Shown: positions 29,901 to 64,000, numbered from the stretch's first letter. The stretch: 64,000 nucleotides of DNA from Leucoraja erinacea (GCF_028641065.1 NC_073379.1:12648001-12712000), one strand, 5' to 3'. A program made the numbers and translations. The notes: generated from the sequence alone by a model not told the origin.

Positions 29901-31185
29901 TTTATACATATACACAGCATATTGAATTCAAGATTAAAGTTATGTATTGTATAAGTGAATTTAATTAGCATTTTCGATTTATCGCACTTCCATTAAAATT
30001 TACTTCGAAGGTTGTTAATATTTTAATTTAAGCAAACTGCATTAATAATAAGATTGTCTTCACTACGTGTTAAATGCATTATTTGAGATTTATAAGCAGA
30101 GCACTACGAAGAAAGGGACTAGAAATAGATTAGTCAGGATCCAGGGGTTGCCGCAGCAGGGAGGTTTGGACATGCTTATGGAGTCAATGGGTCAGAGAAT
30201 TGTACAGTGAAGAAATTGGGCCTTCGGACACACATGTCGATATGAACATCTTTATCTATGTACATGCATCCCGTTGATCCCAATTAGATCCATATCCTTC
30301 CGACTTGTAATAAGAGGGAACTGCTGATGCCGGTGTTTACCAAAGATAGACACGATGTGCTTGCGTAAGTCAGTGGATCAGGCAGCAACTCTGTAGGACG
30401 TGGATAGGTGACGCTTCGTGCCCGGTCCCCTTCTAACCAACTGGGAATTTGCAGCACTTTGTCTATCCTTCCAACTATTTCCGAATTAAGAGCCTGTTCA
30501 TGCGTCTAAACGTCTATTGTACATGTTGTTGTATCTCATTTCCACCACTTTGTTTACTAGCATAATCCCGATATCAAACCCTCTCGGTGTACAGAACCTT
30601 TCCTTTGAACTAGAAGTACTGCATTTTATTATATTACACAAATATTAAAGCGAGTCGGATAATTAGTATGATTGACAACCAAAGGTCGACAAAATCAGCC
30701 AGACCGCAAAAGCAGGTGGGATCGGCGGACTTCATTGCGAGGCAGGTTATATTGCAGTCGGAACACTGGTCTGCTCAGCTTCCTCGGATGGATCAGTCTT
30801 CACGCTTGCTGCGGACACAACAAGACCAATTAAAACAAGCCTCAGTAATTGTACCACAAGACCATTCCTGGCATCTCCATTCACAGCCGTCATTTAAATA
30901 TGTGAAGTGATTCGGACGGATATTTGAACGGAATTCTCCAGAGNNNNNNNNNNNNNNNNNNNNNNNNNNNNNNNNNNNNNNNNNNNNNNNNNNNNNNNNN
31001 NNNNNNNNNNNNNNNNNNNNNNNNNNNNNNNNNNNNNNNNNNNNNNNNNNNNNNNNNNNNNNNNNNNNNNNNNNNNNNNNNNNNNNNNNNNNNNNNNNNN
31101 NNNNNNNNNNNNNNNNNNNNNNNNNNNNNNNNNNNNNNNNNNNNNNNNNNNNNNNNNNNNNNNNNNNNNNNNNNNNNNNNNNNNN

Positions 31186-34069: not shown

Positions 34070-34495
34070 CGGGTGTGATCCGCACCCGGAGCTGGACCTG
34101 CAGCTGGACCTCACGCTGGTACTGATGGGTGAACGGGGGGTGTACGCTGCTCTTGAACTTTTCGTCGACGTTGTTTATCGCAGCGTTGTTTTCAGTTTTG
34201 TTGAACTCCACCAGACACAGGTAGCCGTCACTGTCCTCCACACTCAGCTGCTTTATCCTGGTTGAGGCGTTTCCCAGCTCTGGGTCCCCGACCAGCTCGA
34301 ACCGAGTTGCTCCGTTCTCCGCCGCCCAGGATCCATCAGCTTGTGGTCTGAACGTGACGATGTGTCGGTAGGGATCCTTCCTCATCCATGTGACCGTGAG
34401 GGCCCTGGGGTAATGCGGGGATTGCCGATACACACATGGTAACGTGGCCGAACCCCCCTCAGTCCCATTCACCACTGAGACATCCCCGCCGGGAC
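34070..34495 (-). CDS. Ig V-set exon 2 (V2), copy A
   Basis: ccctcag|...EGGSATLPC...VTW...RFELVGD...DSDGYLC...G|gtaag; 426 nt, phase 1-1. Confidence 0.88.
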
Positions 34496-34659
34496 CTGAG
34501 GGAAGGATAGACACCGGAATGTATCAGCGTTCTGTGGGTGAATCGTCTTGTACCGACCTCTCCCTGTGGGAGTGGGTGGAGCCGGTGCCCAGTGTGGAGC
34601 TGACAGTGACGGTCCCAGGGAAGGTGGGCCAGGGGGCGCAGGGGACAGGACACATTCAA

Positions 34660-38212: not shown

Positions 38213-38596
38213 CTTCCACAGTCAGCTCCGTTGGAATCACAGATTGAAATTTCCCAACATTGAGCTCCAGGCGGCACCGGTACTTATCCCTGTCCACCCG
38301 TCTCAGTGGCTCCACCATTATCGAGGCATCTCCCTCTCTGAGGTTCCCCACGAATCTGAAACGACTGCCTCCGGCCTCCTGTGTCACTTCATCGCATCGG
38401 GAGCGGCCGGGACCGGCAAATGTGCAGTTAAACGCAATGCTGGGATTCAATGATGTCCTCTTGTACCACAGCACGGAGCCGCTGAGGTTGTGATCAATGC
38501 CTGGGTGGGTGAATGTACACGGCAACACAGCGGAGGCCCCTTCCACGGCAGACACCCCATCAGCACCGGACATTGACCAATTAATTTAGGAAACAG
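38213..38596 (-). CDS. SIGLEC15-like V-set exon 1 (V1), copy A (stop in 4th codon)
   Basis: WSMSGADGVSAVEGASAVLPCTFTHP...AFNC...RC...RFRFVGN...DASI...DRDKYRCRLEL...TELTVE G|gtgag. Confidence 0.85.
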
Positions 38597-38779: not shown

Positions 38780-38866
38780 GGGTGCCGGAGGAGGTAGATG
38801 GCAGCCCCGCCGGCAGTCTATTCGTTTTTCATCCTTTTGGGTTTTTTTTAGCGTTTGTTTAAGTTC

Positions 38867-38930
<64 letters not shown>

Positions 38931-39520: not shown

Positions 39521-41877
39521 GTTGTTTTTTTATAATGTTGCCGATTTATTTACATTCTGGGGAGGAGAAATGTTTGGACATTTTTCAGGAACGGGAACGG
39601 AAATGGATTCTTCGGATTCTATCACTGTCACATAATAGATTCATAGTGGAGACGGCCATTCGTTCCATCGGTTATATGCTAACACAATGTAACATCAATC
39701 TAGCCAGTCGAACCTCCAGTCAGCCCTGCAACTTCCTTACTTACACATACCGTCGGTTAAATTTGCCCGTCTCCGCCCCCCCTCCCCTCTCCCACCGCCG
39801 GCGCCGCGTCCCAGTGGAACCGCTCCCTGCGAGGACTCATGTCCCTCAGCAACACACTTGATTCCTTGGCCAATCACCTCCATGCTGTATAGTCATCTCT
39901 TCTCTGTCCACTAATGGGAACAACCTCCCTGTGCGCAATGTTAAATCCCTCCATTAAATCTTCTCTCGACCTCAGTGTTAGGAACTGGAAACCAGTCGGC
40001 CCCTCCAGCTCGCACCTCCGGAAAATAACATCGCGGCTGCTCTACTGTTAACCCTCTCTCCATATCCCCGCCTGCTCTCCGGCAACCTTGCCCCCTCTTG
40101 CTTATTGGGATTCTCGCTCTGTTTTATGAATGGCGGTCTCCATACGCATTTCCTCCATCTTAGCCGTTACCAGATAACCTACACCAAGGGCTCGGTGGGT
40201 ACGAGGGCCCCTCACCACCACCTTCTGAAGGACGCTTAGTTATGGATAATATCACCTGAATCCCCACCCGCCCCATCTCATCTATTGACACCTCAGCCAA
40301 AGTACAAACGGCAGGAGCGCGGACAGAGTGCGAACCGGTACATTGGGAGATATGACGAGACAATGAGGAGATAACAAGGTCAACAAAAACACCTACTGTA
40401 ACCGTGGACTGAGACGGAGAGCAGGACGGTGCAGAGACAGACCCGGAGAGAGCACATCGCCAACACTTCAGTGTGGTGTCCACTTCACCCACAGTTGTGA
40501 GATTCTTGACACTGAAATGCGGAACTTGCTCCAAGTATTTCTACATTTCCGGCAAAGATTTGAGGAACTGCTATACGTACTGATAATTAGTCATTTCATA
40601 CGGAGCAGGGTTAGGGTCCTGAGCAAAAATCAAAGTCATGGAGGAACTAAGCGGGGTAAGCAGTATCCGTGAATGGACATTAACAGACGGCGTCAGAATA
40701 AAGAGGCCAAGACCCGGCACGTCGTCTTCCCATTCTCCTCCACAGGCGTTGCCTGAACCGCTGATCTTTTTCCAGCAATTTGGTTTTCGCACAAGATTCC
40801 GGATCTGCATGTTCGTGTCCCCAGCATTATCGCCATGGAGCGGTGTAGTGCAGGAACAGGCCTTCTAACCCGACATGCGTACAATGTGCCAACAAGTATC
40901 CATCGCCATAATCCTAGTGACCCTCGAGGAATGCAAAGAACGTCAGAGAGTCTTTACATGTAATAGCACAGGCAGACAAAATTAATGATCATCTAGATCA
41001 ACTGCGAAAATGTGCTAAGGAATAGAAGGCCAGTCATTTAAAAAAAGTAATGACGCACACTGTGAACGACGGGGCCCTGGCGAGTGCTGGAAAACAAAGA
41101 GCCCAATAGCACACAAGGTAACATTTTCCAGAAATTGGCGACACGGGTAGTCAGCGTGGCGAGGAAGGTGTGTGGCAGGTTTAGGCAGGATTAATGTGGC
41201 CCATCCACATTAATCCCACCTTAATCCAATTCAACCCATCAAAGGCTGTATCTCATTCCAGGGTAGCTGTCATCTCGCTTTGTTTCCAATGATATTGCGC
41301 CTGTGAAATCTACTTCTGGGTTTTCCAGTTTGTGTGAGGAAGTGAATGTAAAGAATGAATCACCCGTTGTCACCCTGCAATCGGAGCGACAGCAGGACCC
41401 AGCAACGACAACCCCACAGACACTTGTTCACCAACACCTCAGTGCTATAACCACCTCTCTCACGGCTGTTTAATTCTAGACCCATTTGCTTTCTTCATTT
41501 GCTGCAGAATGTTCAGGAGTTGCTAAACTACAAAACTAGGCTCCCTGCATCACTCCCAACCATCTCTTCTCTGTCCACCAATGGGAACATCCTCTCTGTA
41601 GGCGATGTTAAATCCCTCCATTAGATCTTCTCCCGACTGGAAACCAGTCGGCCCCTCCAGGTTGTACCTCCGGTCAATAACATCGCGGCTGATCTGCTGT
41701 CAAACCTCTCTCCATATCCCCGCCTGCTCTCTGTCAACTTTTGCCCTCTTGCTTATCGTGTCTCACTCTGTTTTATGAATGGCGGTCTCCATACGCATTT
41801 TCCTCCAACTTAGCCGTGACCAGATAACCTTCACGAACGGCTCGGTGGGTCAAGGGGGCGCCTTCCCACCACCTTCT

Positions 41878-47360: not shown

Positions 47361-50300
47361 CAATTCCCTGACACGTTGACTCCAGAAGCGTGTCAAACCT
47401 GTGGATTAACTAAAGCTCGCAGTATTTATACCAAGACAGATGATCTTACAACTATAGGGCAGAGGGTTGTGAGACTGGAGAGATGTAAGAGGGAATCGAT
47501 GAATAATATTTTCAGACATTCGTCTGCATATGGGATGAAGCTATGGAAGCAGATGCGATTATGACTTCCAAACGGCATTTCGACATATATGTATACGATC
47601 ATAAGATTATAAGACACAGCAACGGAGTTAGTTCATTCGCCTATCGAGTACACTCCTCTTTTCCCGAATCGTCAGCTATCCACGTCTTCCAGCGGCGCCT
47701 GCCTGATGCGCTGAGTAGCTCCGGAACTTTGTGTCTTTTTGCGGAGTGATTATTTAGTTTTCTCTGACGTTCAGTGTCCCATTATAGACACCCTGGAACC
47801 GGTTCCCTCGCTCTCGCACCGAGGCTCTGTATTCTCATGGTACCTCCTTGGGCGAACACAACGGACTCAGAAAGGGAAGGTTGAGAGTGATGGGTAGAAA
47901 TGATTTAGAGCGACATGGGTCAAACGCATGCAAATGGGTGTATCTTAGACGGGGAATCCTGAGTAGCATCAAAGGGTGGGTCCGAATGGCCTCTTTGCAA
48001 GTTCTATTACTCGAGCAACAGGCACCAACTTGGTAAACTGAGCTCCTGTTCCCGCCCTCCCTTTAAACTCACCGGACCCCAGGTCCCTCGCTCCCTTTAA
48101 ACCCACTGGGGGACACATTAAAGTGCCCCCCTGAAACTGACTGGGTAAACTGGAGAAATTAGTAAACGGCTGTGTGACATTAACAAATTAAAAACGAGTC
48201 GGAGAATTAATATGATTGACAACCAAAGTTCGATAAAGTCAGTCACACCGCAAAAGCAGGTGGGATCGGCGGACGTCATTGTGAGAATATGTCCACATTT
48301 ATCTAGCTTGTAAGATCGGGACAAAAGACCTAGTTTGTGGGAGGATCGTTCAGTAATCGGAAAACAGCGGGACACTAGGAAACGGGAAGTTTAGAAGGAT
48401 GAGGGGTCTCTTCATTAAAACTGACCGAATAGTGAAAGACCTGAATAGAGTGGATGCGGAGAGGATGTTTCCACTAGTGGGAGAGTCTAGGACCAGAATA
48501 AGAGCACGTACCTCTAGAAATTATGGAATTCCTTGCCAGGGAAGGCTGGTGATCGCCGTCAATTTATATATTTAAGGCGGAGATGGATATATTCTAATGA
48601 GTACGGGTGTCATGGGTTATGATGAGAAGGCAGTAGAATTGGGTTTAGAGGTTTGTGCTGCACACGATGCCAAGACCTACTCTAACCTGCCAGCTCTTAA
48701 TTCATATCCCTCCATTCCCTGCCTTTTTGGCTGTAGCTTCAGGGTGGTTGGTCGAGGACACATTATTGGCGATATTTGCCCTAAGGACAGTTCCTTAGGG
48801 CAAATTATCAGGGAACCGGGAGCCTTCATCTACTTCCAGCGGCTCACGCAGCGTCTGTGGACGACGTGGATCGCTGACATTTCGCATCGGAAACATTCCG
48901 CTCCTTTGTCTTGTTGATATTGAAAGAGGGGTGTGGGCGCGGGGGAGGGGTGTGGGCGTGAGGGTTGTTTTACTACGCTCTCTATCTACATCCGGTACAC
49001 CATCTCATCATTGTTTGACATCGACCCACTACAATGGTGTCATCTCCAAACTGGTAGATGATCCAGAGCAGAGTTTGTCCGCACAACCGCGACTATGGGG
49101 AGAATAGTAGGGGAATGCCAATACATCCTTGCGGGGCACCTGTGTTGAGAATTATTGTGGAGGATGTTTTGTCGCATATCTTCGCTGCTTGTGGTCCATG
49201 GGTCAGGAAGTGGAAGATCCAATGACAGAGGGGGAAATGTCACTGGACCCCATCTTCAGAAGTTTGAAGAAGAGTTTGTGGCGGCACAGTGGAGCAACAG
49301 TGGAGTTGCTGCCTTACAGCGCCATGTTCCATCCTGACTATGCGTGCTGTCAGTACGGAGTTTGTATGTTCTCCCTGTGACCGCGTGGGTTTCCTCCGAT
49401 GTGCAGGATAGTGTTAATACCGGGTTCACTGGTCGGCGGGGACGCCGTGGACCTGTTTCCACGCTATATCTCTAAAATATAAGGTCTGTTTGGGGCTGAC
49501 ACACGGGTGACTGGATTTACACGGGATTAGTGATCTGAGTTTGATAGGAATTTGCTTTGTTCGTTTACGGGTCAAAGTTTGTTAACACACCAAGACCCAC
49601 ATTTTCGTAATACCTCTGACAAACAGAGGCCCCGGGATTGTGTGATCCTTTATTTTAACCCGGGTACGGGTCCCACACTCCATTTAAACACTAGGGTTCC
49701 GTATTCCCATAGTACCTGCTCAGCCTGGGAAACACAAACGACTAATATATGAAAGGGTGAGTGATTGATGGGTCAATGGGTAGAAAATATTTAGAAGGAT
49801 AATGGGTCAAACGCAGGCAAATGGGTCCAAATTAGGTGGGGCATCTTGGGCAACATCAACGAGTGGGGCCGAAAGGCCTGTTTGCATGTTCTATGATTGT
49901 AAAAGCAGGCACCAACTTGTCAACCTGAGCTCCTGTCTGTGCTGTTCTGCCCGTGACCGGGAGGATTTTCTCCGGGAGACCCGGCTTCTACCCACATTCC
50001 AAGACCGTGCGGGTGTGTAGATCAATTGGCCTTTGTCTATTTCACCTAGTGTATAGCGAGTGGATGAGTAAATAGGATAACATAGGGCACGTGTGAACGG
50101 GAGATCGATGGTGGACGTGGATTCTGTGAACCGAAGGAGTTTCCATGCTGTATCTGTAAACTAAGATCAAGCGCTACGGTGATTGGCTGGAGAATGGCGG
50201 GGAATGGACTGAGATTTGTGCAAGATAACAGGTAACAAAGAAACAGAACTGGAGATGAGTCAAATGCTCGATGTGGCCATGGACCCAATGGGCCGAATGG

Positions 50301-51575
50301 TCCTTTGGAAATGTTACAAGCAATTCAGAACGTCATTGTATTAATACAAAAATAAAGCAAGCCGAATAATTATTGTATATCTGAATTTAATAACCATTAT
50401 ACACGTTGTTCCATGTTGCCCTCTCATTCAAATATATTGAGAGATTTATACATATACGAAATTAAGCACACTGAATTCAAAATTAAAGTTATGTTCTCTA
50501 TGTATTGCATAAGTGAATTTAATTAGCATTTTCGATTTATCGCCCTTCCATTAAAATTTACTTCGAAGGTTGTAAATATTTTAAATTAAGCAAACTGCAT
50601 TAATAATAAGGTTGTGTTCCCTGCGTGCTCAATGCATCATTTGAGATTTATAAGCACAGCACTACAAAGCAAAGGACTCGAAATAAGTTAGTCAGGATCC
50701 AGGGGTTGCCACAGCACGGAGGTTTGGACATTCTTCTGGAGTCAATGGGTCAGAGAATTGTACAGTGAAGAAATTGGGCCTTCGGACACACATGTCGATA
50801 TGACCATCTTTGTCTATGCACATGCATCCCGTTGGCCTCAATTAGATCCATATCCTTCCAACTTGTAATAAGAGGGAACTGCTGATGCCGGTGTTTACCA
50901 AAGATAGACACGATGTGCTTGCGTAACTCAGTGGATCAGGCAACAACTCTGTAGGACGTGGATAGGTGACGCTTCGTGCCCGGTCCCCTTCTAACCAACT
51001 GGGAATTTGCAGCACTTTGTCTATCATTCCAACTATTTCCGAATTAAGAGCCTGTTCATGCGTCTAAACGTCTATCGAACATGTTGGTGTATCTCATTTC
51101 CACCACTTTGTTTACTAGCATATTCCAGATATCAAACCCTCTCGGTGTACAGAACCTTTCCTTTGAACTAGAAGTACTGCATTTTATTATATTACACAAA
51201 TATTAAAAGCGAGTCGGATAATTAATATGATTGACAACCAAAGGTCGACAAAATCAGCCAGACCGCAAAAGCAGGTGGGATCGGCGGACTTCATTGCGAG
51301 GCAGGTTATATTGCAGTCGGAACACTGGTCTGCTCAGCTTCCACGGATGGATCAGTCTTCCACGCTTGCTGCGGACACAACAAGACCAATTAACACAAGC
51401 CTCAGTAATTATACCACAAGACCATTCCTGGCATCTCCATTCACAGCCGTCATTTACATTTGTGAAGTGATTCGGACGGAGATTTGAACGGAATTCTCCA
51501 GAGGGTCAACGTTATTGTCAATGTCAGCGTTTGACAACAACATTTGAGGTGGACATCAATATGCGAAACAGGTGA

Positions 51576-54500
51576 TTAACTTAACAGGGGACACGTATAT
51601 TGTTCGTTGTGTTCACAGTGAGGAGGATTGTCTGACCTGCAGCAAGGTATTGGTTTATTATCGTCACCTTGACACAGATAGGAGGAAAAAAACTTTGTTT
51701 CGCGTGTCATCCAGATAAATTATTCCATAGACCCAAACCGTGCAGAATATAGTCTTACAGAGAAAGGGCAGAGGGCAAGGGCCCCATCAAGGTAGACTGG
51801 AGGATCGGGAATACATTCTTATCTTTTGAGGGATTTCTCAAAGCGTCTGAGCGCGTAAGAAACTGTTCTTCCATCTGTAGGTACATGATGCACCTGAGCC
51901 ATGTATTGCCAACGTGACAGGGGTACCACGGTGGCGCAGTTGTAGAGATGCTGCCTTGCAGCGGAGAGTCCCGGGTTCGATCCTGATTACGGGTGCTGTC
52001 TGTGCGGAGTTTCCACGTGCTCCCCGTGACCGCATGGTTTTTGTCCCTCCCATATCCCAAAGACTTGCGGGTTTGTAGGGTAATTGTCCTCTGCAAACGC
52101 CCCCTATAGTGCAGGATAGAACTAATGCATGGATGATGATGGTTGGCGCGGCCTAGGAAGCCTCACAGTTTTCAATCACACCCCAAAGGTCATTGAGTTT
52201 ATATTCCAGGCATAGAAACGCAACATTACGTACCTGAGTTTGTCACGGTAGAAGATAACACACATCACTAAAAGGACAATGGTTTTTAATCCGAGAGGGA
52301 TCCACAGGATCAGAACCTTGTAACTCTGTGTGACTGAGGAGAGAGTGAGAGAGATCAGAGTGGTCACTTGGAAAGTGGAGCGATCGACAATGTACAAATG
52401 GTGTATGCTTCACTAAGATCACCTCTTATTCTCTACACTCTAGAGAATACAGGTCTAATCTGCTGGAGGAAATAACAGACTGCTGACAGCGCTCAGGAAG
52501 TCAGGCAACTGTCGAAGGAAACCCAAATACGTCGTTTTGTCCGGGAATCCTTCCAGTTTTGAGGCAAATCTCGAATTGAATTGTCATTCGGCAATTTCCT
52601 TCCAGACATGCTACCTGGCCGATCGAGTTCCTCCAGTAACTTTTTTTTTCTGCTCAATGTTCCTGTGCCTGCATTCTCCAGGGTCTCCGGTCTAATCAAT
52701 CTCCCCTGATCTTCAATCAACCTGCCCTTCTGGGAAACAGTGGCGGAATCTTCACTACACTCCCTCCACACTAATCGTGGTTTTATTGTAGTTAAGAAGA
52801 ACAAAGTCCGACCCAGTATTGCAGGTGAGGTCCCGCTAGATCCTTATATAACCTCGGTGAAATATCTCAATCCTTGAATATAAATCCTCTCTTGACAAAA
52901 CCCGAACAACTATAGCCTTTCTCGACTCTTCCACCCTTCATTGACACGAGAACAAGCACAATATGGTCCTTTTGAACATCCACACCACCCGATCTCTGAC
53001 CATTTAATAAACACTCTCTCACCCGATGCGGATAATTTGACAATTTGCCCATTTTATTCCACATGCTCCCACCCCCTTCTCGACTCCTCCTGCCCTCTCA
53101 GTCCCACGGCACTACCACCATCATCAGACCTGACAATTGCCCCCCCCAATGACACTGAGCAGACAAGCTGAGACCTGGTCCTTTTGAAGTACCTCGCCAG
53201 CCGCAGACTCCCAACATGACAGAGATCCAGATATTTCATTCTACATTCTCCTCGATAACAGCTTCTCAATCCCTAACGGCGCGTTGCCTTAATGCCGCCT
53301 TCTCGCACCTGGTTCCCCAAACTCCTGGCTGGGACCCAACCTAGATCCTTCTGAGATCCAACCTACCACAGCACCTTGTTATCTCGGGCATTCAACTCCT
53401 CCCTCGCCAATAGACTCCAATCAGCTTGTCAACTATGGTCCCCGAATCTCCGCGTCCTCCTGCCCTCTCTCAGTCCCACGGCACTACCACCATCATCAGA
53501 CCTGACAATGCCCCCCCCCCCTCTCAATCAAACTGACTGATGCAGACTGTGAATAGCTGAGACCAAGAACCAAACTGTGAAGTACCTCCCTCGCCAGCCG
53601 CAGACTCTCAACATGACAGAGATCCAGATATTTCATTCTACATTCTGCTCGATAACAGCTTCTCAATCCCTGACAGTGCGTTGCCTTAATGCCGCCTTCT
53701 CGCACCTGGTTCCCCAAACTCCTGGCTGGGACCCAACCTAGATCCTTCTGAGAATCCAAACCTACCACAGCACCTTGTTCCCTCTCGGGCATTCAACTCC
53801 TCACCTCGCCAATAGACTCCAATACATTGATCAACTATGGTTGACTTTTCTCTGGAGTTGTATCTGACCCTCTAGATGCGAGGCTGCGCCCACTGAGTCC
53901 TGAGAGACAGGGTTTCCTGTTCCTGCTCTCCTCCCTCCCTCTGCACCCTCGCTCTACACGGCAGAATGTGGCGATAGTTTCTTACCGGGTGTGATCCGCA
54001 CCCGGAGCTGGACCTGCAGCTGGACCTCACGCTGGTACTGATGGGTATACGGGGGGTGTACGCTGCTCTTGAACGGTTCGTGGATGTTGTTTATCGCATC
54101 GTCGTTTTCAGTTTTGTTGAACTCCACCAGACACAGGTAGCCGTCACTGTCCTCCACACTCAGCTGCTTTATCCTGGTTGAGGCGTTTCCCAGCTCTGGG
54201 TCCCCGACCAGCTCGAACCGAGTTGCTCCGTTCTCCGCCGCCCAGGATCCATCAGCTTGTGGTCTGAACGTGACGATGTGTCGGTAGGGATCCTTCCTCA
54301 TCCATGTGACCGTGAGGGCCCTGGGGTAATGCGGGGATTGCCGATACACACATGGTAACGTGGCCGAACCCCCCTCAGTCCCATTCACCACTGAGACATC
54401 CCCGCCGGGAGCTGAGGGAAGGATAGACACCGGAATGTATCAGCGTTCTGTGGGTGAATCGTCTTGTACCGACCTCTCCCTGTGGGAGTGGGTGGAGGCG

Positions 54501-57500
54501 GTGCCCATGGCTCTGCATCAGGGGTCATTGGTCGTCGCTGAAGGCACAGCGAAACCGCGCCTACCCGGATCACAACACTGTTCTCCACGGGAAATATTCA
54601 ATATGTGAAGCGGTGAAGTCCACACCGAGAGGGAAACCCGCTCACACGGGATTGGGCACCGGGCACCGACACCTCCTTTAACACTGGACACTTCGGTTTC
54701 CATTGATAGTTGGATTCCAACACGGTGAACACTAAGGAATTTGATTTGTAAATTAGGCAATTTATTGGTCAATAGAAGCAAGGCTGCTCTGGGAGGGCGG
54801 CAGTGAGGGAGCGGCTTTGTGAGTAAAGTGTGAGTCTTTGGCTCGAGATTCTTCGGTGAGGAGGCTGAGGAGAGGAGACTACGCAAAAAGCTGGAGATGA
54901 CGGGACGCGGTGAACACATGAAGGGGAAGATGAGACAGTGTGATGCAGAATGTGGGAGCCCAGCGACATGGATGGAGCCTCTGGCTGCTACAACTGTGGC
55001 ATGTGTGTCCGGGTTCAGCTCCTGAAGGACCGTTTTGCGGCACAGGAGAAGCGGTTGGATGACCTCAGGGCCATCTGGGAAAACGAGAGTTTCCTGGACA
55101 GGACCTACAGTGAGGTAGCCACGCAAAGGTTACGGGAAGAACCAAGACTGTGAGATAGGGACGTAACCATGGAGTGCAGGAGACCAAGGTGGCTGTGCCT
55201 AATGAAAATATATACACATTATTGGGGGAGACGACGCTTCCAGTCCGAGCAGTGGCTCCAATCCTAGAGATGGGACTCGACTTGCGAGACCGACGTCGGG
55301 CAGATCCATAGTGGTGGGTGACTCCATTATCCGAGTTGTGAACAGGAGATTCCGTGGAGGCAGGCGAGATGTGAGGATGGTCTGTTGCCTCCCTGGTGCC
55401 AGGGTTCAAGATGTCACGAACCGAATTCAGAACATCCTCGAGAGAGAAGGTGAACAGCCCGCAGTAGTTGTGCACGTCGGCACAAACGACATCGGGAAGA
55501 AGAGGAAGGAGGTTCTGCAACTCGTGTTAAGAGAGTTAGGAAGCAGACTGAAAAGCAGGACTTCTAGGCTGGTTATCTCTGGATTTTGTCCAGTACCTTG
55601 TGCTAGTGAGGACAGGAGCAGGGAGATAGGGGATCTGAATGTGTAGCTGAGGGGCTGGCGCGGGGAGCAAGGATTTAGATTTATAGACCACTGGGATCTC
55701 TTCTGGGGTAGGGGTGACCTGTACAAATGGGACGGGTTACACCTTAACTGGAGGGGGACCGACATTGTGGCAGGAAGATTTGCTAGGGTCACACGTGTGG
55801 GTTTAAACTAAATAGTGGGTGGGAGGGATTGTCAAATTGGGAGTATAAAGATGCGGTTGTAGGGAAGTTGGTACAGGGGAAATTACAAAAGACTCTCGGG
55901 AAGGAAAGTTCGAAAAGGGATAAGAGAATGTCTGGGTCAATTGCTAGCGGTGCGAGGGGGGAGGTGAATACGGAGGTCAACGTGTTGTATAGGAATGCAC
56001 GAAGTATAAGAAATAAAGTGGACGTGCTTGAGGCTCAGTTAGAAATTGGCAAGTATGATTTTGTAGGAATTACAGAGGCATGGCTGCAAGAGGGCCAGGG
56101 CTGGTAACTGAATATTCAAGGGTATACCTCCTATCGAAAGGACAGACAGCTGGGCTCTGTTGGACAGGTGGGGTAGCTCTGTTGGTGTGGAATGAAATTC
56201 AGTCCCTTGCAAGGGGTGACATTGAAATAGGACATGTGGAGTCAGTATGGATAGAACTAAGGAATTGTAAGGGTGAAAAGACCCCAATGGGCTTGTCAAC
56301 AGCCCCCCAAACAGTAGCCTGAACATAGGGTGCAAGTTTAACCAGGAATTAAAATTGGCATGTAGCAAAGGTAATGCTAAGATTGTTATGGGAGATTTCA
56401 ACATGCAGGTAGACTGGGAAAATCAGGTTGGCACTGGACCCCAAGAAAGAGAGTTTGTGGAGTGCCTCCGTGATGAATTCTTAGAGCAGCTTGTACTGGA
56501 GCCTACCAGGGAGAAGGCCATTCTGGATTTAGTGTTTTGTAATGAACCGGATTTGAGAAAGAAGTTTGAGGTTAAGGAGCCGTTAGGAGAAAGTGACTAA
56601 TATGGTCGTTCAATCTACAATTGGAGAGGGAGAAGAGTAGATCGGAGGTTTCCGTGTTACGGTTGCATAAAGGGGACAATGGAGCCATGAGGGAGGAGCT
56701 GGCCAAAGTTCACTGGAAAGATACTCTAGCAGGGATGACAGTGGAACGACAATGATAGGTATGTCTGGGAATAATACAGAAGGTGCGGGATTATTTCATC
56801 CCAAAAAGGAAGAAAGATTCCAAGGGGAATAAGGGGCGACCGTGGCTGACCGTGGCAAATGCAGTTTAATTTGCATACATGTGAGGTTAACCACTTTGGT
56901 AGCAAAAACAGGAAGGCAGATTACTATCCAAATGGTGTCAAGTTGGGAAAAGGGAAAGTACAACGAGATCTGGGGGTCCTTGCTCATCAGTCTATGTAAG
57001 TAAGCATGCAGGTACAGCAGGCAGTGAAGAAAGCGAATGGCAAGGTGGTCTTTATAACAATAGTGTAGGAGCAAATAGGACCTTCTGCAGTTTTACGGGG
57101 CCCTAGTGAGACCACACCTGGAGTATTGTGCGCAGTTTTGGTTCCCTAATTTGAAGAAGGACATTCTTGCTATTGAGGGAGTGCAGCGTAAGTTTACAGG
57201 GATAATTCCCGGGATTGCGGGACTGTCATATGCTGAGAGAATGGAACGGCTGAGCTTGTATACTCTGGAGTTTAGATGGATTAGAGGGGATCATATTGTA
57301 ACATATAAGATTATTAAGGGTTTGGACACGCTAGAGGCGGGAAACATGTTCCCGGTGTTGGAACAAGGTGCCACAGTTTAAGAATAAGGGGTAAGCCATT
57401 TAGAACGGAGTCGGGGAAACACGTTTTCTCACAGAGAGTTGTGAGTCTGTGGAATTCTCTGCCGTTTCTATGGATACTTTCAAGAGAGAGCTAGATAGGA

Positions 57501-60500
57501 TTCTTAAAGATAACGGAGTCAGGGGATATGGGGAGAAGGCACGAAGGGCGTACAGATTGGGGATGATCAGCCATGATCCCATCGAATGGCGCTGCTGGCT
57601 CGATGGGCCGAATGGCCTACGCATTTATTCCTATGAAGAAAAAAAGGGGTAAGGGTAAGAACAGTCAGCCATGGCTCAGTAAAACTATAAAGGATAGTAT
57701 TCGGCTGAAGGCAAGGGCATATAAGGTAGCCAGAGATAGTGGGAGGGTAGAGGATTGGGAAGCATTTAAAGGTCAGCAAAAAATAACTAAGAGATTAATT
57801 AAGACGGGGAAAATAGACTATGAAAGGAATTTAGCGAACAACATAAAAACTAATAGTAAGAGTTTTTATAGCTATATAAAAAGAAAAAGGGTGGCTAAGG
57901 TGAACGTTGGTCCATTGGAGGGTGAGACTGGAGAGTTGTTGGTGGGGAACATGGAAATGGCAAAGGCATTAAACGAGTATTTTGTATCAGTCTTCACCAT
58001 AGAAGACACAAAAAATATTCCAACGCTGGATAAACAGGGGGCGGTAGGAATGGAGGAGCTAAATACTATTAAGATCACCAAGGAGGTGGTATTAGGGAAA
58101 TTAATGAGACTGAAGGAGGATAAATCCCCTGGGCCTGATGGATTACATCCAAGGGTCTTGAGGGAGATAGCGGTGGGGATTGTGGATGCATTGGTGATAA
58201 TTTTCCAAAACTCCCTGGAGGCAGGAACGGTCCCAGTGGATTGGAAAATGGCCAATGTAACACCTATATTTAAAAAAGGAAGTAAACAGAAGGCGGGTAA
58301 CTATAGACCGGTTAGTCTAACATCGGTGGTGGTTAAAATGTTAGAGACAATTATTAAAGAAACACTAACGGGGCACTTGGATAAACATGACTTCATCGGA
58401 CAGAACCAGCATGGTTTTGTGAAGGGGAAGTCCTGTTTAACGAATCTGCTCGAATTCTTTGAGGAAGTAACAACCCGGGTGGATAAAGGGGAACCGGTGG
58501 ATGTGGTATACTTGGACTTCCAAAAGGCTTTTGACAAGGTGCCACATAAGAGACTATTGCTAAAAATAAAAAATTATGGGATTGGGGGTAATATATTAGC
58601 ATGGGTAGAGGATTGGCTAACAAATAGGAAGCAGAGAGTGGGGATAAATGGTTCATACTCGGGATGGCAACCGGTAACTAGCGGGGTTCCGCAAGGGTCG
58701 GTGCTGGGACCCCAGTTGTTCACAATTTATATAAATGATTTGGAGGAGGGAACCAAGTGTAATATATCAAAATTTGCGGACGATACAAAAATGGGAGGAA
58801 AAGTAGGGGATGAGGAGGATAGGAAGAGTCTGCAAAAGGATATAGATAAGGTAGGTGAGTGGGCAACAACTTGGCAGATGAAATTTAATACTAATAAATG
58901 TGAAGTCATTCACTTTGGGGAAAAAAATGATAGGGCAAGTTATTTTCTAAATGAGGAGGAGCTGCGTTGTAATGCAACGCAAAGGGATCTAGGGGTACTA
59001 GTACATGAATCACTGAAAGTTAGTATTCAGGTGCAGCAAGCAATCAGGAAGGCCAATGGAGTTTTGGCCTTTATTGCTAGGGGGATTGAGTTTAAAAAGA
59101 CGGAGGTCTTGCTGCAGCTGTACACAGTATTAGTGAGACCACATTTGGAATACTGTGTACAGTTCTGGGGTCCATACTTAAGAAAGGATGTACTAGCCCT
59201 GGAGGCAGTGCAGCGAAGGTTTACAAGATTAATTCCTGCAATGAGGGGATTGACATATGAGGAAAGGTTAAGTAGGCTGGAACTCTACTCTTTGGAGTTT
59301 AGAAGAATGAGAGGCGATCTCATTGAAACATATAAGATCGTGAGGGGCCTTGATCGGGTGGATGCACCGAGGATGTTCCCAATGATCGGGGAAACTAGAA
59401 CTAGGGGACATAGTTGCAGAATAAGGGGGGGGCTCTTTTAAAACTGAGATGAGGAAGAACTTCTTCACCCAGAGGGTGGTTAATTTATGGAATTCACTGC
59501 CCCAGGGAGCAGTGGAAGCAGAAACTTTAAATATATTTAAGACTAAAATAGATGGTTTTTTAGCTGCCAAGGGGATAAGGGGCTACGGGGAGAGGGCAGG
59601 GATATGGACCTAGGTATGGTTAGTATAGTAAGACCTGAGTGATCTCCTGGACAAGTGTCGATCGCCTAGATTGGGGTCGGAGAGGAATTTCCCGGATTTT
59701 TTTCCCGAATTGGACCTGGGTTTTTATCCGGTTTTTTGCCTCCCCCAGGAGATCACGAGGTTCTTGGGGTGGAGAGGGGTGATAGCGGTATAAAGGGGAG
59801 GGTAGTGTCTTGTGTTCTGTGTCTTGTGTCTACTGTTTGTGGGTAAGTGTGTCTGTTTAGTGTTCAGCCATGAGCGAATGGCGGTGCGGGCTCGATGGAC
59901 CTGGTGGTCTGCTCTCGCACCTACTTTCTATGTTTCTATGTTTCTATGCATGTACATATTGTCTAATGTCTATAACGTCACCTTCCTATTTCTCGGATTA
60001 CACAGCCCACCTGTATTTGACTGTCGACCAGGGCCGGCGTCTCGTCTACTCCAGGAGCGCACTGGCCAGACGGATTAACTGGAGAGGAATCAGGAGTAGG
60101 AACTCAGGCACTTCAATCCCCCACCCCCACACCACCCGACGCCAGGCGGCGATGGTTCTCGCCCAGCAGCGCGGCTGTGAGTGTTCTCCGGCTTGGCCCC
60201 ACTTTAGGACCGGCTCGCCGACCGCGGACCTAACGACAGGACCCGCGCCGCAAGAACGAAGAGGAACCCGGGAGCAACCGCCGAGAGGAAGGTGGGCCGT
60301 CGGAGAGTGAGGAGGGTCGTCTGATAGTGTGGAGGGTCGACGGAGAGTGAGTTGGGCCGTCGGGGGGCGAGGAGGGCAGCCGAGAATGACAGTGAGGGGG
60401 AGGTGGGGCCGATGCCACCAGCGGCAGCAGGCAGTAGAGAGAACTGCGGTGAATCTTTGCAGCTGTCGGCGCCAAAACGTGGCGACACTTGTGTACTGTC

Positions 60501-63032
60501 AAGGTGACGTCCGCTACATGATTGTTCTGGGTTGTCTGCAAAACAACGTATTTCACTGTACCTAGGCACGTGTGAGAATACAGTATCATTGAATCATTGA
60601 ATTGAACTATCAACATGTGTTGATCAGCATTGTACCGGGGGAACCCGCGGTCCGTGAGCTCTGGGGCAGCGACAGTCTCTGAACATTGTTCTCACCTTCC
60701 ACAGTCAGCTCCGTTGGAATCACAGATTGAAAATTCCCAACATTGAGCTCCAGGCGGCACCGGTACTTATCCCTGTCCTCCCGTCTCAGTGGCTCCACCA
60801 TTATCGAGGCATCTCCCTCTCTGAGGTTCCCCACGAATTTGAACCGACTTCCGGCCTCCTGTGTCACTTCATCGCATTGGGAGCGGCCGGGACCGGCAAA
60901 TGTGCAGTTAAACGCAATGCTGGGATACAATGATGTCCTCTTGTACCACAGCACGGAGCCGCTGAGGTTGTGATTAATGCCTGGGTGGGTGAATGTACAC
61001 GGCAACACAGCGGAGGCCCCTTCCACGGCAGACACCCCATCAGCACCGGACATTGACCAATTAATGTAGGAAACATCTGGAGAGAGAGCGAGAGAGAGAG
61101 AGAGAGGGGGGGGGGGGTGGGGGGGAGAGGTTAATATTGGAACGAGTACAGGTGCGCGTTCCAAATCCACACTGTCCCCGGGTGGTTGTCACAAGCGATG
61201 TCTTCAGATTTGGGACTGAATCATCAACACGGGGGCGGGGATATAATCAACAATTCATGGGTGTGTAATCACGTCTGTTCCGCGGGTCAGCACAAGGCGG
61301 TGCCGGAGGAGGGAGATGGCAGCCCTGCCGGCAGTCTATTCGTTTTTCATCCTTTTTGGGTTTTTTTAGCGNNNNNNNNNNNNNNNNNNNNNNNNNNNNN
61401 NNNNNNNNNNNNNNNNNNNNNNNNNNNNNNNNNNNNNNNNNNNNNNNNNNNNNNNNNNNNNNNNNNNNNNNNNNNNNNNNNNNNNNNNNNNNNNNNNNNN
61501 NNNNNNNNATCAACCTTAGGATCACATTCTCCGGGCTCTGCGGCCTACCATCGCTGGAGCTGGGAGCCGCCTCGGACTGTCGTGAGCCCCACCGCGGGGC
61601 GCGGACTTACCATCGGAGCGGATCCCTTGCCTGGGATCGCTCCCACCGCGGCCTGCGGACTTACCATCAAGGGCTCGCAGTCTCGGGAGAGGCTAGTCGG
61701 GAGCTCCAACGCCGCAGAAGGTTTGTCCAGCCCCGACGCGAGGTTACATCGCCCGGCGCGGGGGAGCTGACTTCTCCCGTTGCAGGAGCTGGACGCCTCG
61801 ACGCCGCCGGCTATAGGTCTCAAGACCATCCCGTCAACGGAGGGTTCGAGGCCCCAACCAAGGAAGAACAAGAAGGAAAGGACTTGGAACTTTATTTTCG
61901 CCTTCCATCACAGTGAGGAATATGTAGGAGTCACTGTGATGGATGTTTATGTTAACATTTGTTTTTTTGAGTCTGCTGCTTTTTAAATTGTATGACTGAC
62001 CTGGCCAGTGAATTTCACTACACCAATTGGTGTATGTGACAATAAACGAACTTATGAACATGAAATTATGAACTTATGAGTTGTTTTTTTATAATGTTGC
62101 TGATTTATTTACATTCTGGGGAGGGGAAATGTTTGGACATTTTTCAGGAACGGGAACGGAGATGGATTCTTCGGATTCTATCACTGTCACATAATAGATG
62201 CATAGTGGAGACGGCCATTCGTTCCATCGGTTATATGCTAACACAATGTAACATCAATCCAGCCAGTCGAACCTCCAGACAGCCCTGCAACTTCCTTACT
62301 TACACATACCGTCGGTTAAATTTGCCCGTCTCCGCCTCCCCCCCCCCCTCCCCCCCCCCCGGCCCCCTCTCCGTCCCCGTCCCAGTGGAACCGCTCCCTG
62401 CGAGGACTCATGTCCCTCAGCAACACACTTGGTTCCTTGGCCAATCACCTCCATACTGTATAGTCATCGCTTCTCTGTCCACTAATGGGAACAACCTCCC
62501 TGTGCGCAATGTTAAATCCCTCCATTAAATCTTCTCTCGACCTCAGTGTTAGGAACTGGAAACCAGTCGGCCCCTCCAGCTCGCACCTCCGGAAAATAAC
62601 ATCACGGCTGCTCTGCTGTTAATTCTCTCTCCACGTCCCCGCCTGCTCTCTGTCGCCTTTTCCCCTCTTGGTTATCGAGAGTCTCAATCTGTTTTATGAA
62701 TGGCGGTCTCCATACGCATTTTTCCTCCATCTTAGCCGTTACCAGATAACCTACACCAAGGGCTCGGTGGGTAAAGAAGTCGCCTCACCACCACCTTCTG
62801 AAAGACTCTGCCGTATGGATAATATCACCTGAATCCCCACCCGCCCCATCTCATCTATTGACAGACCTCAGCCAAAGTACAAACGGCAGGAGCGCGGACA
62901 GAGTGCGAACCGGTACATTGGGAGATATGACGAGACAATGAGGAGATAACAAGGTCAACAAAAACACCTACTGTAACCGTGGACTGAGACGGAGAGCAGG
63001 ACGGTGCAGAGACAACCCCGGAGAGACCACAT
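51576..63032 (-). CDS. SIGLEC15-like two-V-domain activating-type receptor, copy B (spliced, ~342 aa)
   Basis: Exons 62972-63032 (MWSLRGCLCTVLLSVSVHGY, donor gtaggt), 60696-61076 (V1), 53986-54411 (V2), 52234-52333 (TM with Lys), 51576-51636 (tail RSDNPPHCEHNEQYTCPLLS*, least certain). Total 1029 nt, no internal stop, all GT-AG. Confidence 0.8.
52234..52333 (-). CDS. transmembrane exon, copy B
   Basis: Same peptide and splice sites as 32654-32753. Confidence 0.8.
53986..54411 (-). CDS. Ig V-set exon V2, copy B
   Basis: Within ORF 53954-54430; LPC...W...DSDGYLC; ccctcag| and |gtaag. Confidence 0.88.
54740..57620 (+). mobile_element. CR1 LINE (ORF1 esterase + EN + deleted RT), paralog of 34660-37490
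   Basis: Same motifs and same internal deletion, so it predates the duplication. Confidence 0.88.
57625..59943 (+). mobile_element. young 5'-truncated CR1 LINE with uninterrupted RT ORF, only in copy B
   Basis: ORF to 59441: KSPGPDGLHP, NYRPVSLTS, YLDFQKAFDKV, SGVPQGSVLGP, KFADD; (ctatgttt)n tail; flanks ctacgcat / ctatgcat (probable TSD). Confidence 0.93.
60696..61076 (-). CDS. SIGLEC15-like V-set exon V1, copy B
   Basis: ctctccag|AT GTT TCC TAC ATT AAT TGG...; LPCTFTHP, two extra Cys, YRCRLEL; G|gtgag; 381 nt. Confidence 0.9.
62972..63032 (-). CDS. signal-peptide exon, copy B (copy A: 40397-40457)
   Basis: ATG + 20 mostly hydrophobic codons, phase-1 donor gtaggt matching the V1 acceptor phase. 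Confidence 0.7.
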
Positions 63033-64000
63033 CGCCAACACTTCAGTGTGGAGTCCACCTCACCCACAGCTGTGAGCTTCTTGACGCTGAAATGCGGAAC
63101 TTGCTCCAAGTATTTCTACATTTCCGGCAAAGATTCGAGGAACTGCTATACGTACTGATAATTAGTCATTTCATACTGAGCAGGGTTAGGGTCCTGAGCA
63201 AAAATCAGTCATGGAGGAACTAAGCGGGTTAAGCAGTATCCGTGAAGGGACATTAACAGACGGCGTCTGAATAAAGAGGTCAAGACCCGGCACGTCGTCT
63301 TCCCATTCTCCTCCACAGGCGTTGCCTGAACCGCTGATCTTTTTCCAGCAATTTGGTTTTCGCACAAGATTCCGGATCTGCATGTTCGTGTCCCCAGCAT
63401 TATCGCCATGGAGCGGTGTAGTGCAGGAACAGGCCTTTTAACCCGGCATGCGTACAATGTGCCAACAAGTATCCATCCCATAATCCTAGTGACCCTCGAG
63501 GAATGCAAAGAACGTCAGAGAGTCTTTACATGTAATAGCACAGGCAGACAAAATTAATGATCATCTAGATCAACTGCGAAAATGTGCTAAGGAATAGAAG
63601 GCCAGTCATTTAACAAAAGTAATGACGCACACTGTGAACGACGGGGCCCTGGCGAGTGCTGGAAAACAAAGAGCCCAATAGCACACAAGTTAACATTTTC
63701 CAGAAATTGGCGACACGGGTAGTCAGCGTGGCGAGGAAGGTGTGTGGCAGGTTTAGGCAGGATTAATGTGGCCCATTCACATTAATCCCACCTTAATCCA
63801 ATTCAACCCATCAAAGGCTGTATCTCATTCCAGGGTAGCTGTCATCTCGCTTTGTTTCCAAGGATATTGCGGCTGTGAAATCTGCTTCTGTGTTTTCCAG
63901 TTTGTGTGAGGAAGTGAATGTAAAGAATGAATCACCCGTTGTCACCCTGCAATCGGAGCGACAGCAGGACCCAGCAACGACAACCCCACAGACACTTGTT

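What the first reader, a model, noticed from the sequence alone, without database searches (positions are those of the whole stretch)
51576..63032. Duplicated SIGLEC15-like receptor with a V-V-TM(Lys) architecture: candidate activating sialic-acid lectin family
Seen: five in-phase GT-AG exons give an open ~342-aa type I membrane protein, with a second copy about 20-22 kb away. V1 has WSM...VSA..G.SAVLPCTFTHP, an extra Cys pair (AFNC...QC) and F-strand YRCRLEL. Known: these match the SIGLEC15 V domain (WSM...LPCTFTHP, extra Cys pair, YFCRVE with the essential sialic-acid Arg), but SIGLEC15 is V-C2 and usually single copy. Here domain 2 is another V-set lacking the Arg (YLCLVE) with a long FG-loop insert. 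Inference: a lineage-specific, expanding Siglec/PILR-like innate receptor family. I cannot confirm novelty without a search.
Basis: partly seen in the sequence, partly recalled or inferred. Interest (0 to 1): 0.8.

Follow-up and report, generated by a model that had tools for sequence, protein, structure and literature searches.

The report
Skate Siglec-15-like V-V receptor duplicate
The window holds two tandem copies of a little-skate gene for an immune-cell surface receptor that carries a Siglec-15-type sugar-binding domain, a second variable-type domain and a membrane lysine. One copy is broken by a stop codon, and both belong to a large shark-and-ray receptor family that databases predict but that I found described in no paper.

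Summary
On the minus strand lie a leader exon (63032-62972), V1 (61076-60696), V2 (54411-53986) and a transmembrane exon with a lysine (52333-52234), all phase-1 GT-AG.

- **Identity:** these four exons match RefSeq XP_055488091.1 (Leucoraja erinacea LOC129695296) exactly.
- **Exon 5:** Reads join the TM exon to a different last exon starting at 51368.
- **Gap:** the assembly gap lies inside intron 1 and touches no reading frame.
- **Second copy:** the copy 20-22.5 kb away (LOC129695295) is real, but has a TAA stop at the third full codon of its V1 exon.
- **Domains:** V1 is closest, by sequence and by predicted fold, to the human Siglec-15 V domain. It keeps the Trp, the extra disulfide and the F-strand Arg. 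Domain 2 is V-set, not C2.
- **Family:** this is not the 1:1 SIGLEC15 ortholog. It belongs to an elasmobranch-wide multigene family with activating (TM Lys) and inhibitory (ITIM tail) forms.
- **Origin:** the family branches from chondrichthyan V-V-C2-TM(Lys) Siglec-15-like genes.

This scan has already found the same family elsewhere in this genome. Sialic-acid binding and DAP12-type signalling are inferred, not shown.

The parts
62972..63032 (-). Copy A exon 1: ATG and signal peptide (MWSLRGCLCTVLLSVSVHGY, then a split codon), donor A|GTAGGT, phase 1
   Evidence: identical to residues 1-20 of XP_055488091.1
61372..61508 (.). Assembly gap inside intron 1 of copy A; it interrupts no coding sequence
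   Evidence: N run; the flanks 59944-61371 and 61509-64000 are collinear with copy B 37477-38853 and 38954-41428. The gap was not filled or read from elsewhere.
60696..61076 (-). Copy A exon 2: V1, a Siglec-15-type V-set domain (Trp of WSM, Cys47-Cys127, extra Cys78-Cys88, Arg128 in YRCRLEL; numbering of P0237)
   Evidence: V-set E 4.6e-9; 7zoz E 6.5e-13; Z 12.1 to 7zoz
57620..59943 (+). LINE insertion, antisense to the gene, present only in copy A intron 2; 622-aa reverse-transcriptase ORF at 57573-59441
   Evidence: RVT_1 E 1.5e-33
53986..54411 (-). Copy A exon 3: V2, a V-set domain without the Arg (YLCLVEF) and with an FG insert of about 23 residues
   Evidence: (V-set E 3.3e-13); RNA depth confined to the exon
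52234..52333 (-). Copy A exon 4: stalk end and transmembrane helix with mid-membrane Lys (ILWIPLGLKTIVLLVM), donor AG|GTACGT, phase 2
   Evidence: RNA depth and the junction from 52234
52176..52233 (-). Read-through of the exon 4 donor, used by RefSeq XP_055488091.1 as its C-terminus (RYVMLRFYAWNINSMTFGV*); not seen in RNA
   Evidence: depth 0.01 or less in bin 52092-52232
51576..51636 (-).
   Evidence: in-phase AG acceptor; zero depth in bins 51387-51809 in all four runs and no junction; absent from both RefSeq models
50400..51368 (-). The family's usual last exon plus 3'UTR (it runs on below 50400). Copy A has one extra G at 51360/51361 relative to copy B and to all junction reads. That changes SKRED* into a 38-residue tail.
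   Evidence: RNA depth 10-20x in X14, 13 junction reads, and A-specific contigs in X1
40397..40457 (-). Copy B exon 1 (leader), intact
38213..38596 (-). Copy B V1 exon with an in-frame TAA at 38588-38586 (TAC in copy A). RefSeq XP_055488089.1 therefore starts at the internal Met and has no signal peptide.
34070..34495 (-). Copy B V2 exon; 9 differences from copy A, 8 of them within 57 nt of the FG loop
32654..32753 (-). Copy B TM(Lys) exon, identical to copy A
30793..30808 (-). Copy B last coding exon start (S KRED stop)

Best explanation
The region holds LOC129695296 of the little skate (Leucoraja erinacea). Its tandem duplicate LOC129695295 lies 20-22.5 kb away.

Copy A encodes a type I membrane receptor with four parts:
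- a signal peptide;
- V1, a Siglec-15-type V-set domain that keeps the residues Siglec-15 uses to hold sialic acid;
- V2, a second, Arg-less V-set domain with a long variable FG loop;
- a transmembrane helix with a central lysine and a short tail without signalling motifs.

The most likely mechanism is that of an activating member of a paired-receptor family. V1 binds a sialylated ligand through Arg128. The membrane lysine pairs with the aspartate of a DAP12/DAP10-type ITAM adaptor, which signals in myeloid or lymphoid cells.

- **Shown:** the gene structure; the domain types; the closest relatives; the family and its activating and inhibitory forms; transcription and TM-to-last-exon splicing at the level of this gene and its close paralogues.
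- **Inferred:** sialic-acid binding, adaptor pairing and cell type.

Copy B has a stop at the third full codon of its V1 exon and is most likely a transcribed pseudogene or a null allele.

The family arose in cartilaginous fish from a V1-V2-C2-TM(Lys) Siglec-15-like gene. It lost the C2 exon and expanded in elasmobranchs.
For: - **Exons and identity:** exon structure and phases come. The exons match RefSeq proteins exactly.
- **V1:** the best PDB sequence hit is Siglec-15 7zoz at E 6.5e-13, with WSM, LPCTFTHP, the Cys pair and the CR motif aligned. The best single-domain fold hit is 7zoz at Z 12.1, rmsd 2.2 A, 33% identity. The residues match the binding-site description in PMC10264397.
- **V2:** Pfam V-set at E 3e-13. 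The two-domain AlphaFold model has pLDDT 84.7, and its best Foldseek hits are JAML and scFv, both V-V.
- **TM:** the Lys sits in a PLGxK motif also present in the bird and mammalian Siglec-15 sequences retrieved. PMC7226832 reports that this Lys binds DAP10/12.
- **Family:** 90 elasmobranch homologues were found. Among the 242 proteins retrieved up to, 47 score as V1-V2-TM(K) (a count inflated by a few ITIM-tailed forms) and 16 as V1-V2-TM-ITIM.
- **Tree:** V1, V2 and bony-vertebrate Siglec-15 V domains form three groups. The V-V-C2 genes branch outside the V-V family in both the V1 and the V2 part (support 100/99).
- **RNA:** depth is confined to exons, and 13 reads join the TM exon to the last exon.
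Against: - No binding or signalling experiment exists for any family member.
- 20 of 67 aligned family members lack the Arg, so sugar binding is not universal in the family.
- RNA reads are a mix of copy A, copy B and other paralogues, and none of the 13 junction reads carries copy A's exact exon-5 start. A full-length copy A transcript is therefore not demonstrated.
- The V1-V2 junction was not tested with reads.
- pN/pS between the copies is 1.69 on only 19 differences. That fits relaxed constraint as well as diversifying selection.
- I did not test whether the skate has a DAP12-type adaptor.
Confidence: 0.75

Rival explanations
1. Both copies are decaying duplicates without a working product. 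Copy B is stopped in V1, and copy A is frameshifted in the family's normal last exon.
For: - TAA in copy B.
- An extra G in copy A at 51360/51361 relative to copy B and to all 13 junction reads.
- 16 nonsynonymous against 3 synonymous differences between the copies.
- RefSeq had to use an intron read-through to close copy A's frame.
Against: - Copy A is open through the leader, V1, V2 and TM exons with all conserved residues.
- The tail behind the TM is short and variable across the family, so a changed tail need not disable an adaptor-dependent receptor.
- A-specific 3'UTR contigs are transcribed (X1 record 1).
- The extra G may be an assembly error or a difference between individuals.
Confidence: 0.12
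2. It is a working activating receptor, but its ligand is not sialic acid. It might be a protein ligand bound through the V1/V2 faces or the V2 FG loop, as JAML binds CAR or PILR needs a peptide plus a glycan. The Arg would then be retained only by descent.
For: - The two-domain model resembles JAML most.
- Differences between the copies cluster in the V2 FG loop.
- 30% of family members have replaced the Arg.
- According to PMC7226832, the cloned zebrafish Siglec-15 bound the tested glycans only weakly.
Against: - V1 keeps the Trp, the Arg, an aromatic residue in the G strand and the extra disulfide of the Siglec-15 site.
- Identity to JAML is only 15-16%.
Confidence: 0.2
3. It is the skate's 1:1 SIGLEC15 ortholog, merely with an unusual second domain.
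For: [quoted passage not shown]
- V1 and the TM resemble those of Siglec-15.
Against: - At least seven paralogous loci exist in L. erinacea, two of them in this window.
- There is no C2 domain.
- C2-bearing V-V-C2-TM(K) genes in chimaera, rays and sharks branch outside this family.
Confidence: 0.03
4. It belongs to the skate MDIR (modular domain immune-type receptor) family, which resembles CD300, TREM and pIgR, rather than to the Siglec-15 lineage.
For: - MDIRs are multigene activating/inhibitory IgSF receptors of skates (PMC3031540).
- V2 has weaker pIgR D1 hits (E 7.6e-6).
Against: - Siglec-15 is the best hit for both V1 and V2.
- None of the 90 close homologues carries an MDIR name or comes from Raja eglanteria.
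- MDIR sequences themselves could not be fetched, so this was not tested directly.
Confidence: 0.05

Closest known systems
Siglec-15 (human SIGLEC15, PDB 7zoz; bird, frog and teleost orthologs)
   Same: - An N-terminal V-set domain with WSM, LPCTFTHP, the B-F disulfide, the extra C'-C'' disulfide and the F-strand Arg.
- A TM helix with a Lys in a PLGxK motif.
- A short tail, so an adaptor-dependent activating design.
   Different: - Domain 2 is a second V-set domain instead of C2.
- It is a multigene family with inhibitory ITIM-tailed and V1-only members, not a single conserved gene.
- The window copy has a shorter FG loop in V1.
- At the position of human Tyr87, copy A has Leu with a Tyr next to it, and copy B has Asn at the position of that neighbouring Tyr.
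Chondrichthyan V1-V2-C2-TM(Lys) 'Siglec-15' predictions (Callorhinchus milii XP_042192165, Mobula hypostoma XP_062903801, Heptranchias, Rhincodon)
   Same: The same V1 and V2 domain classes in the same order, and the same TM Lys. In the domain tree they are the nearest outgroup of the family for both V1 and V2.
   Different: They keep the C2 domain. They also occur in a chimaera, while the C2-less family was retrieved only from sharks, rays and skates.
Paired activating/inhibitory receptor families (CD33-related Siglecs such as Siglec-5/14, PILRA/B, KIR, SIRP)
   Same: - Near-identical ectodomains sit on either a charged-TM short tail or an ITIM tail.
- The genes are clustered and undergo recent tandem duplication and pseudogenisation.
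- Some members have lost the sugar-binding Arg.
   Different: The family derives from the Siglec-15 lineage, which is not known to have expanded in this way in bony vertebrates. Its ectodomain is V-V.
JAML (AMICA1; PDB 3mj6)
   Same: A two-V-set ectodomain; it is the best Foldseek match for the two-domain model.
   Different: Only 15-16% identity, with a different relative domain placement (rmsd about 11 A). No Siglec motifs. RefSeq's 'JAML-like' names for family members are automatic labels.

Membership tests
Siglec-15 (SIGLEC15 orthologs) | N-terminal V-set domain with the essential F-strand Arg (human R143) directly after the F-strand Cys | tested here: met
   YRCRLEL aligns with YFCRVEF of 7zoz. 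Arg128 is present in 47 of 67 family members. Role of R143: PMC10264397.
Siglec-15 (SIGLEC15 orthologs) | Extra C'-C'' disulfide (human C95-C104), and Trp44 of the WSM motif | tested here: met
   FNC...QC aligns with FRC...LC, and NWSM with RWSM. Cys78 and Cys88 are present in 66 and 65 of 67 members, and Trp27 in 57 of 58 ungapped rows.
Siglec-15 (SIGLEC15 orthologs) | Second extracellular domain of the C2 set (V-C2 architecture) | tested here: not met
   Domain 2 is Pfam V-set at E 3.3e-13. A profile built from Siglec-15 C2 domains does not hit it. The model matches V-V proteins.
Siglec-15 (SIGLEC15 orthologs) | Transmembrane Lys that recruits DAP12/DAP10 | tested here: inconclusive
   The Lys is present in ILWIPLGLKTIVLLVM, in the same PLGxK context as the bird and mammalian Siglec-15 sequences retrieved. 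Adaptor binding cannot be tested here (role of the Lys: PMC7226832).
Siglec-15 (SIGLEC15 orthologs) | One conserved orthologous gene per genome | tested here: not met
   Two copies in the window and at least five further loci in L. erinacea. The V-V-C2 genes branch outside.
Siglecs in the functional sense | Arg-dependent binding of sialylated glycans | not testable with these tools
   This needs V1-Fc, glycan arrays, and sialidase and Arg128Ala controls.
Paired activating/inhibitory IgSF receptor family | Related ectodomains on a charged-TM short tail and on an ITIM-bearing tail, encoded by clustered paralogues | tested here: met
   - LOC129695285 (P0003) lies on the same 113.5 Mb scaffold.
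- Its V2 is 84-89% and its V1 about 70% identical to the window copies. It has a neutral TM and a tail with VIYSAV.
MDIR (skate modular domain immune-type receptors) | Ig domains of the CD300/TREM/pIgR type | not tested
   No MDIR sequences were available. Indirect evidence only: the best hits are Siglec-15, not CD300 or pIgR, and there are no MDIR-named homologues.
PILR | A single Siglec-like V domain closest to PILRA/B | tested here: not met
   PILR is absent from the 60 best PDB sequence hits listed. PILRA fold Z is 9.1, below Siglec-15 at 12.1 and sialoadhesin at 10.2.

The most novel reading that the evidence does not exclude
Cartilaginous fish turned the Siglec-15 lineage, conserved and V-C2 in the bony vertebrates sampled here, into a large and fast-evolving paired-receptor system. 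That system would be comparable in role to the CD33-related Siglecs or PILR of mammals.

- V1 would read host sialic acid.
- The V2 FG loop, where 8 of the 9 V2 differences between the two window copies lie, would be a second and diversifying contact site shaped by pathogens.
- The window would then show the system's birth-and-death dynamics directly: one intact activating copy, and one freshly disabled copy that may still be transcribed.
Probability: 0.35. Interest if true: 0.7.

Novelty: new variant of a known kind. Interest (0 to 1): 0.55.

Why it matters
- **Literature view:** Siglec-15 is treated as one of the conserved Siglecs (V-C2, TM Lys), and the fish study read here covers no cartilaginous fish (PMC7226832).
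- **What differs here:** the chondrichthyan members retrieved carry an added Arg-less V domain. Elasmobranchs dropped the C2 domain and expanded the gene into activating and inhibitory forms.
- **Wider point:** the paired-receptor design would thus have arisen independently from another Siglec lineage.
- **Practical value:** the family offers natural variants, with and without the Arg and with variable FG loops, for studying Siglec-15 ligand recognition. Siglec-15 is a current target in bone disease and cancer immunotherapy.
- **Annotation:** the two RefSeq models in this window need correction. Copy A's C-terminus is an intron read-through, and copy B starts at an internal Met behind a stop.

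Tried and rejected
- **Leader donor:** my first choice (62978) was wrong.
rejected on RNA evidence and on family homology (SKRED-type exon).
- **RefSeq's read-through C-terminus for copy A:** no RNA depth.
- **Further family exons:** a regex scan and tblastn with 12 family proteins found only the two copies in the window.
- **Repeat at 51951-52091:** Rfam gave nothing.
- **Literature:** searches for Siglec-15 with sharks or cartilaginous fish found no description of the family. The MDIR search found only a secondary mention.
- I therefore could not check the Amblyraja ortholog, also annotated from the internal Met, for the same stop. Synteny could not be examined either.
- **Copy-specific expression:** this could not be settled, because reads at 93% likeness mix copy A, copy B and other paralogues.
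- **Spliced model:** Exons were searched one by one by reference. Whole-protein steps used the RefSeq protein P0237 that the database returned. Scripts joined exons only to count length and frame.

Full report
**What is in the sequence**

The feature lies on the minus strand. Four exons have AG acceptors, GT donors and the phase-1 boundaries typical of Ig-superfamily genes.

| Exon | Coordinates | Content |
|---|---|---|
| 1 | 63032-62972 | ATG and signal peptide |
| 2 | 61076-60696 | V1 |
| 3 | 54411-53986 | V2 |
| 4 | 52333-52234 | stalk end and TM helix ILWIPLGLKTIVLLVM |

The in-frame translation of each exon is an exact substring of RefSeq XP_055488091.1. That protein is 'uncharacterized protein LOC129695296' of Leucoraja erinacea, 341 aa (P0237). 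The window therefore comes from the little skate, on a 113.5 Mb scaffold.

**The assembly gap**

The N run at 61372-61508 lies in intron 1. It is 295 nt from the V1 acceptor and about 1.46 kb from the leader donor, so no reading frame crosses it. Both flanks align collinearly with the second copy: 59944-61371 with 37477-38853, and 61509-64000 with 38954-41428. Intron 1 is about 1.9 kb in copy A and 1.8 kb in copy B. That is consistent with continuity across the gap. I did not read or use the letters of copy B that correspond to the gap.

**The duplicate**

A tandem segmental duplication pairs 48723-64000 with 28197-41428 at 89-97% identity. Copy B has its leader at 40457-40397, V1 at 38596-38213, V2 at 34495-34070 and TM at 32753-32654. 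Offsets from copy A are 19.6 to 22.6 kb. The difference in offset comes mainly from a 2.3 kb LINE insertion with an RT ORF (57620-59943) found only in copy A's intron 2.

Copy B equals RefSeq XP_055488089.1 (LOC129695295, 300 aa) from an internal Met onward. The reason for that start is visible in the DNA. The third full codon of copy B's V1 exon is TAA (38588-38586) where copy A has TAC. The RefSeq model therefore starts behind the stop and has no signal peptide. Unless that base is an error or an allele, copy B cannot make a membrane receptor.

The exons of the two copies differ at 21 of about 970 positions, plus one 3-nt indel. Of the 19 differences counted in whole codons, 16 are nonsynonymous and 3 synonymous, giving pN/pS 1.69. 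These numbers are too small to separate relaxed constraint from diversifying selection. Eight of the nine V2 differences lie within 57 nt of the FG loop.

**The 3' end**

The exon at 51636-51576 is in phase, but neither RefSeq model uses it.
- **The two RefSeq models.** The copy A model reads through the exon-4 donor (..RYVMLRFYAWNINSMTFGV*). The copy B model splices to a short exon encoding SKRED* at 30808-30793.
- **Relatives.** Other family members end the same way: SKREDGSIAGS, SKSGD, RRNRD.
- **Where the RNA lies.** I laid four runs on 50400-54600. The oligo-dT run X14 covers only the V2 exon, the TM exon and 50400-51368.
- **Junction reads.** Thirteen reads join 52234 to the acceptor at 51368.
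- **The extra G.** Copy A's homologous exon has one extra G (51360/51361), which would replace SKRED* by a 38-residue tail. All junction reads lack that G: eleven read SKRED* (two of these also differ in the last bases of the TM exon) and two read SKRGD*.
- **Copy A is transcribed.** A-specific 3'UTR contigs exist. X1 record 1 (50507-50738) has one mismatch in a stretch where the copies differ at about 20 sites.
- **What stays open.** Either the extra G is an assembly or individual difference, or copy A's own junction was not sampled.

Letters that are neither A-type nor B-type show that further paralogues contribute reads. Expression and splicing are therefore shown for this gene group, not for copy A alone. 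The V1-V2 junction was not covered by the one reads call allowed. It rests on phase, on RefSeq and on dozens of homologues.

**What the domains are**

V1 is Pfam V-set (E 4.6e-9).
- Its best solved-structure relative by sequence is human Siglec-15 (7zoz, E 6.5e-13). CD33 follows at 8e-7.
- The alignment pairs NWSM with RWSM, LPCTFTHP with LPCTFTHP, FNC..QC with FRC..LC, and YRCRLEL with YFCRVEF.
- According to PMC10264397, these are the Trp44 contact, the C64-C142 and C95-C104 disulfides, and the essential R143.

V2 is V-set (E 3.3e-13). Its best PDB hit is again the Siglec-15 V domain (E 8e-9), but it has Leu where the Arg would be and no extra Cys pair.

An AlphaFold model of P0237 was built on 67 family sequences (mean pLDDT 84.7, pTM 0.75).
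- It shows two Ig domains, an FG insert with two short helices in V2 (residues 247-269), and a long TM helix.
- Foldseek ranks V-V proteins first: JAML at E 4.7e-16, then scFvs and pIgR.
- The aligner that does not depend on Foldseek gives 7zoz as the best single-domain match for residues 25-148. That match has Z 12.1, rmsd 2.2 A, 120 of 125 residues and 33% identity. Sialoadhesin scores 10.2 and PILRA 9.1.

**The family**

A full-library HMMER search with V1 found 262 proteins at E 0.001 or below, many with several V repeats. A search with the Rhinoraja V-V-TM(K) protein found 90 homologues at E 1e-10 or below. All come from sharks, rays and skates. RefSeq names range from 'uncharacterized' to Siglec-15, sialoadhesin-like, JAML-like and HAVCR1-like.

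I classified the 242 proteins retrieved up to that point with profiles for V1, V2 and the Siglec-15 C2 domain.

| Architecture | Number of proteins |
|---|---|
| V1-V2-TM with Lys | 47 |
| V1-V2-TM with ITIM tail | 16 |
| V1-only, activating or inhibitory | 8 |

The script that flags a Lys also caught the KK stop-transfer residues of a few ITIM-tailed proteins, such as P0003 and P0166. The first count is therefore slightly inflated.

L. erinacea has at least seven loci. One is the ITIM-tailed LOC129695285. Its V2 is 84-89% identical to the window copies while its V1 is about 70% identical. That is a paired-receptor pattern.

The Arg is kept in 47 of the 67 aligned members.

**Relation to SIGLEC15**

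Mammalian, bird, frog and characiform Siglec-15 sequences are V-C2-TM(Lys). C2-bearing chondrichthyan relatives are V1-V2-C2-TM(Lys). They are:
- Callorhinchus XP_042192165;
- Mobula XP_062903801;
- Heptranchias, which has an ITIM tail;
- a Rhincodon V2-C2 isoform.

In a domain tree (IQ-TREE, 67 domains), V2 domains form one group (100/99). Bony-vertebrate Siglec-15 V domains form a second, and chondrichthyan V1 domains a third. In both the V1 and the V2 part, the V-V-C2 genes branch outside the C2-less family (100/99 each).

The simplest history has three steps:
1. V2 was added before chimaeras and elasmobranchs split.
2. A copy lost its C2 exon in elasmobranchs.
3. That copy expanded.

The root and the order of events are inferred, not tested. 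The gene is therefore not the 1:1 SIGLEC15 ortholog.

**Likely mechanism**

By analogy with Siglec-15, R143 holds the sialic-acid carboxylate and the TM Lys recruits DAP12/DAP10 (PMC10264397, PMC7226832). On that basis copy A most likely works as an adaptor-dependent activating lectin receptor. V2 would act as a spacer or as a second contact surface. These steps are inference. No tool here can test binding or signalling, and I did not look for the skate adaptor genes.

**Novelty**

- Both genes are already predicted in RefSeq.
- This scan had already met the same family elsewhere in this genome, and those notes agree with what I found independently. They cover a head-to-head V-V-TM(Lys) pair (s1-876302) and the Arg-less neighbour that overlaps the window's first 1.3 kb (s1-878680). 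They also cover a multi-V pair and a V-V3-C2 member about 9.2-9.3 Mb away (s1-877454, s1-877466).
- I found no paper that describes the family.
- A relation to the skate MDIR family could not be tested directly.

I rate it a new variant of a known kind and of moderate interest. For this particular locus, the wrong last exon and the broken second copy lower that interest.

Noticed in passing
window 51951-52091: An interspersed SINE-like repeat in the intron between the TM exon and the last exon attracts very deep partial RNA matches in all four runs (mean word depth about 3500 in X1). Related copies lie at 2247-2373 and 49280-49397. It matches no Rfam family.
   Followed up: partly
window 54803-57619 and 34665-37479; 57620-59943: Both copies carry CR1-type LINE pieces (esterase/OSK-like and endonuclease fragments) on the + strand in intron 2. 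Copy A alone has a further 2.3 kb insertion with an open 622-aa reverse-transcriptase ORF, which dates it after the duplication.
   Followed up: partly
window 52176-52233 and 32596-32653: The read-through of the exon-4 donor (AG|GTACGT) translates to LRYVML. This looks like an ITIM but comes from the splice-donor consensus itself. RefSeq uses this read-through as the C-terminus in this gene and in an isoform of the neighbouring HAVCR1-like gene. No RNA depth supports it here.
   Followed up: partly
My motif scan and tblastn with family proteins found no Siglec-15-like V exon at this place.
   Followed up: no
P0163 (Amblyraja radiata LOC116971356): The closest Amblyraja relative is also annotated from the internal Met (MSGADEV...) without a leader, like copy B. 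The same stop may therefore be older than the A/B duplication, or the leader may simply have been missed.
   Followed up: no
P0001 and P0020 (Protopterus annectens): The lungfish has Siglec-15-like predictions with duplicated Arg-type V domains (V-V-C2-TM(Lys), and a protein with 7 V domains plus C2). In the tree its two V domains pair with each other, which points to an independent V duplication in a bony vertebrate.
   Followed up: partly
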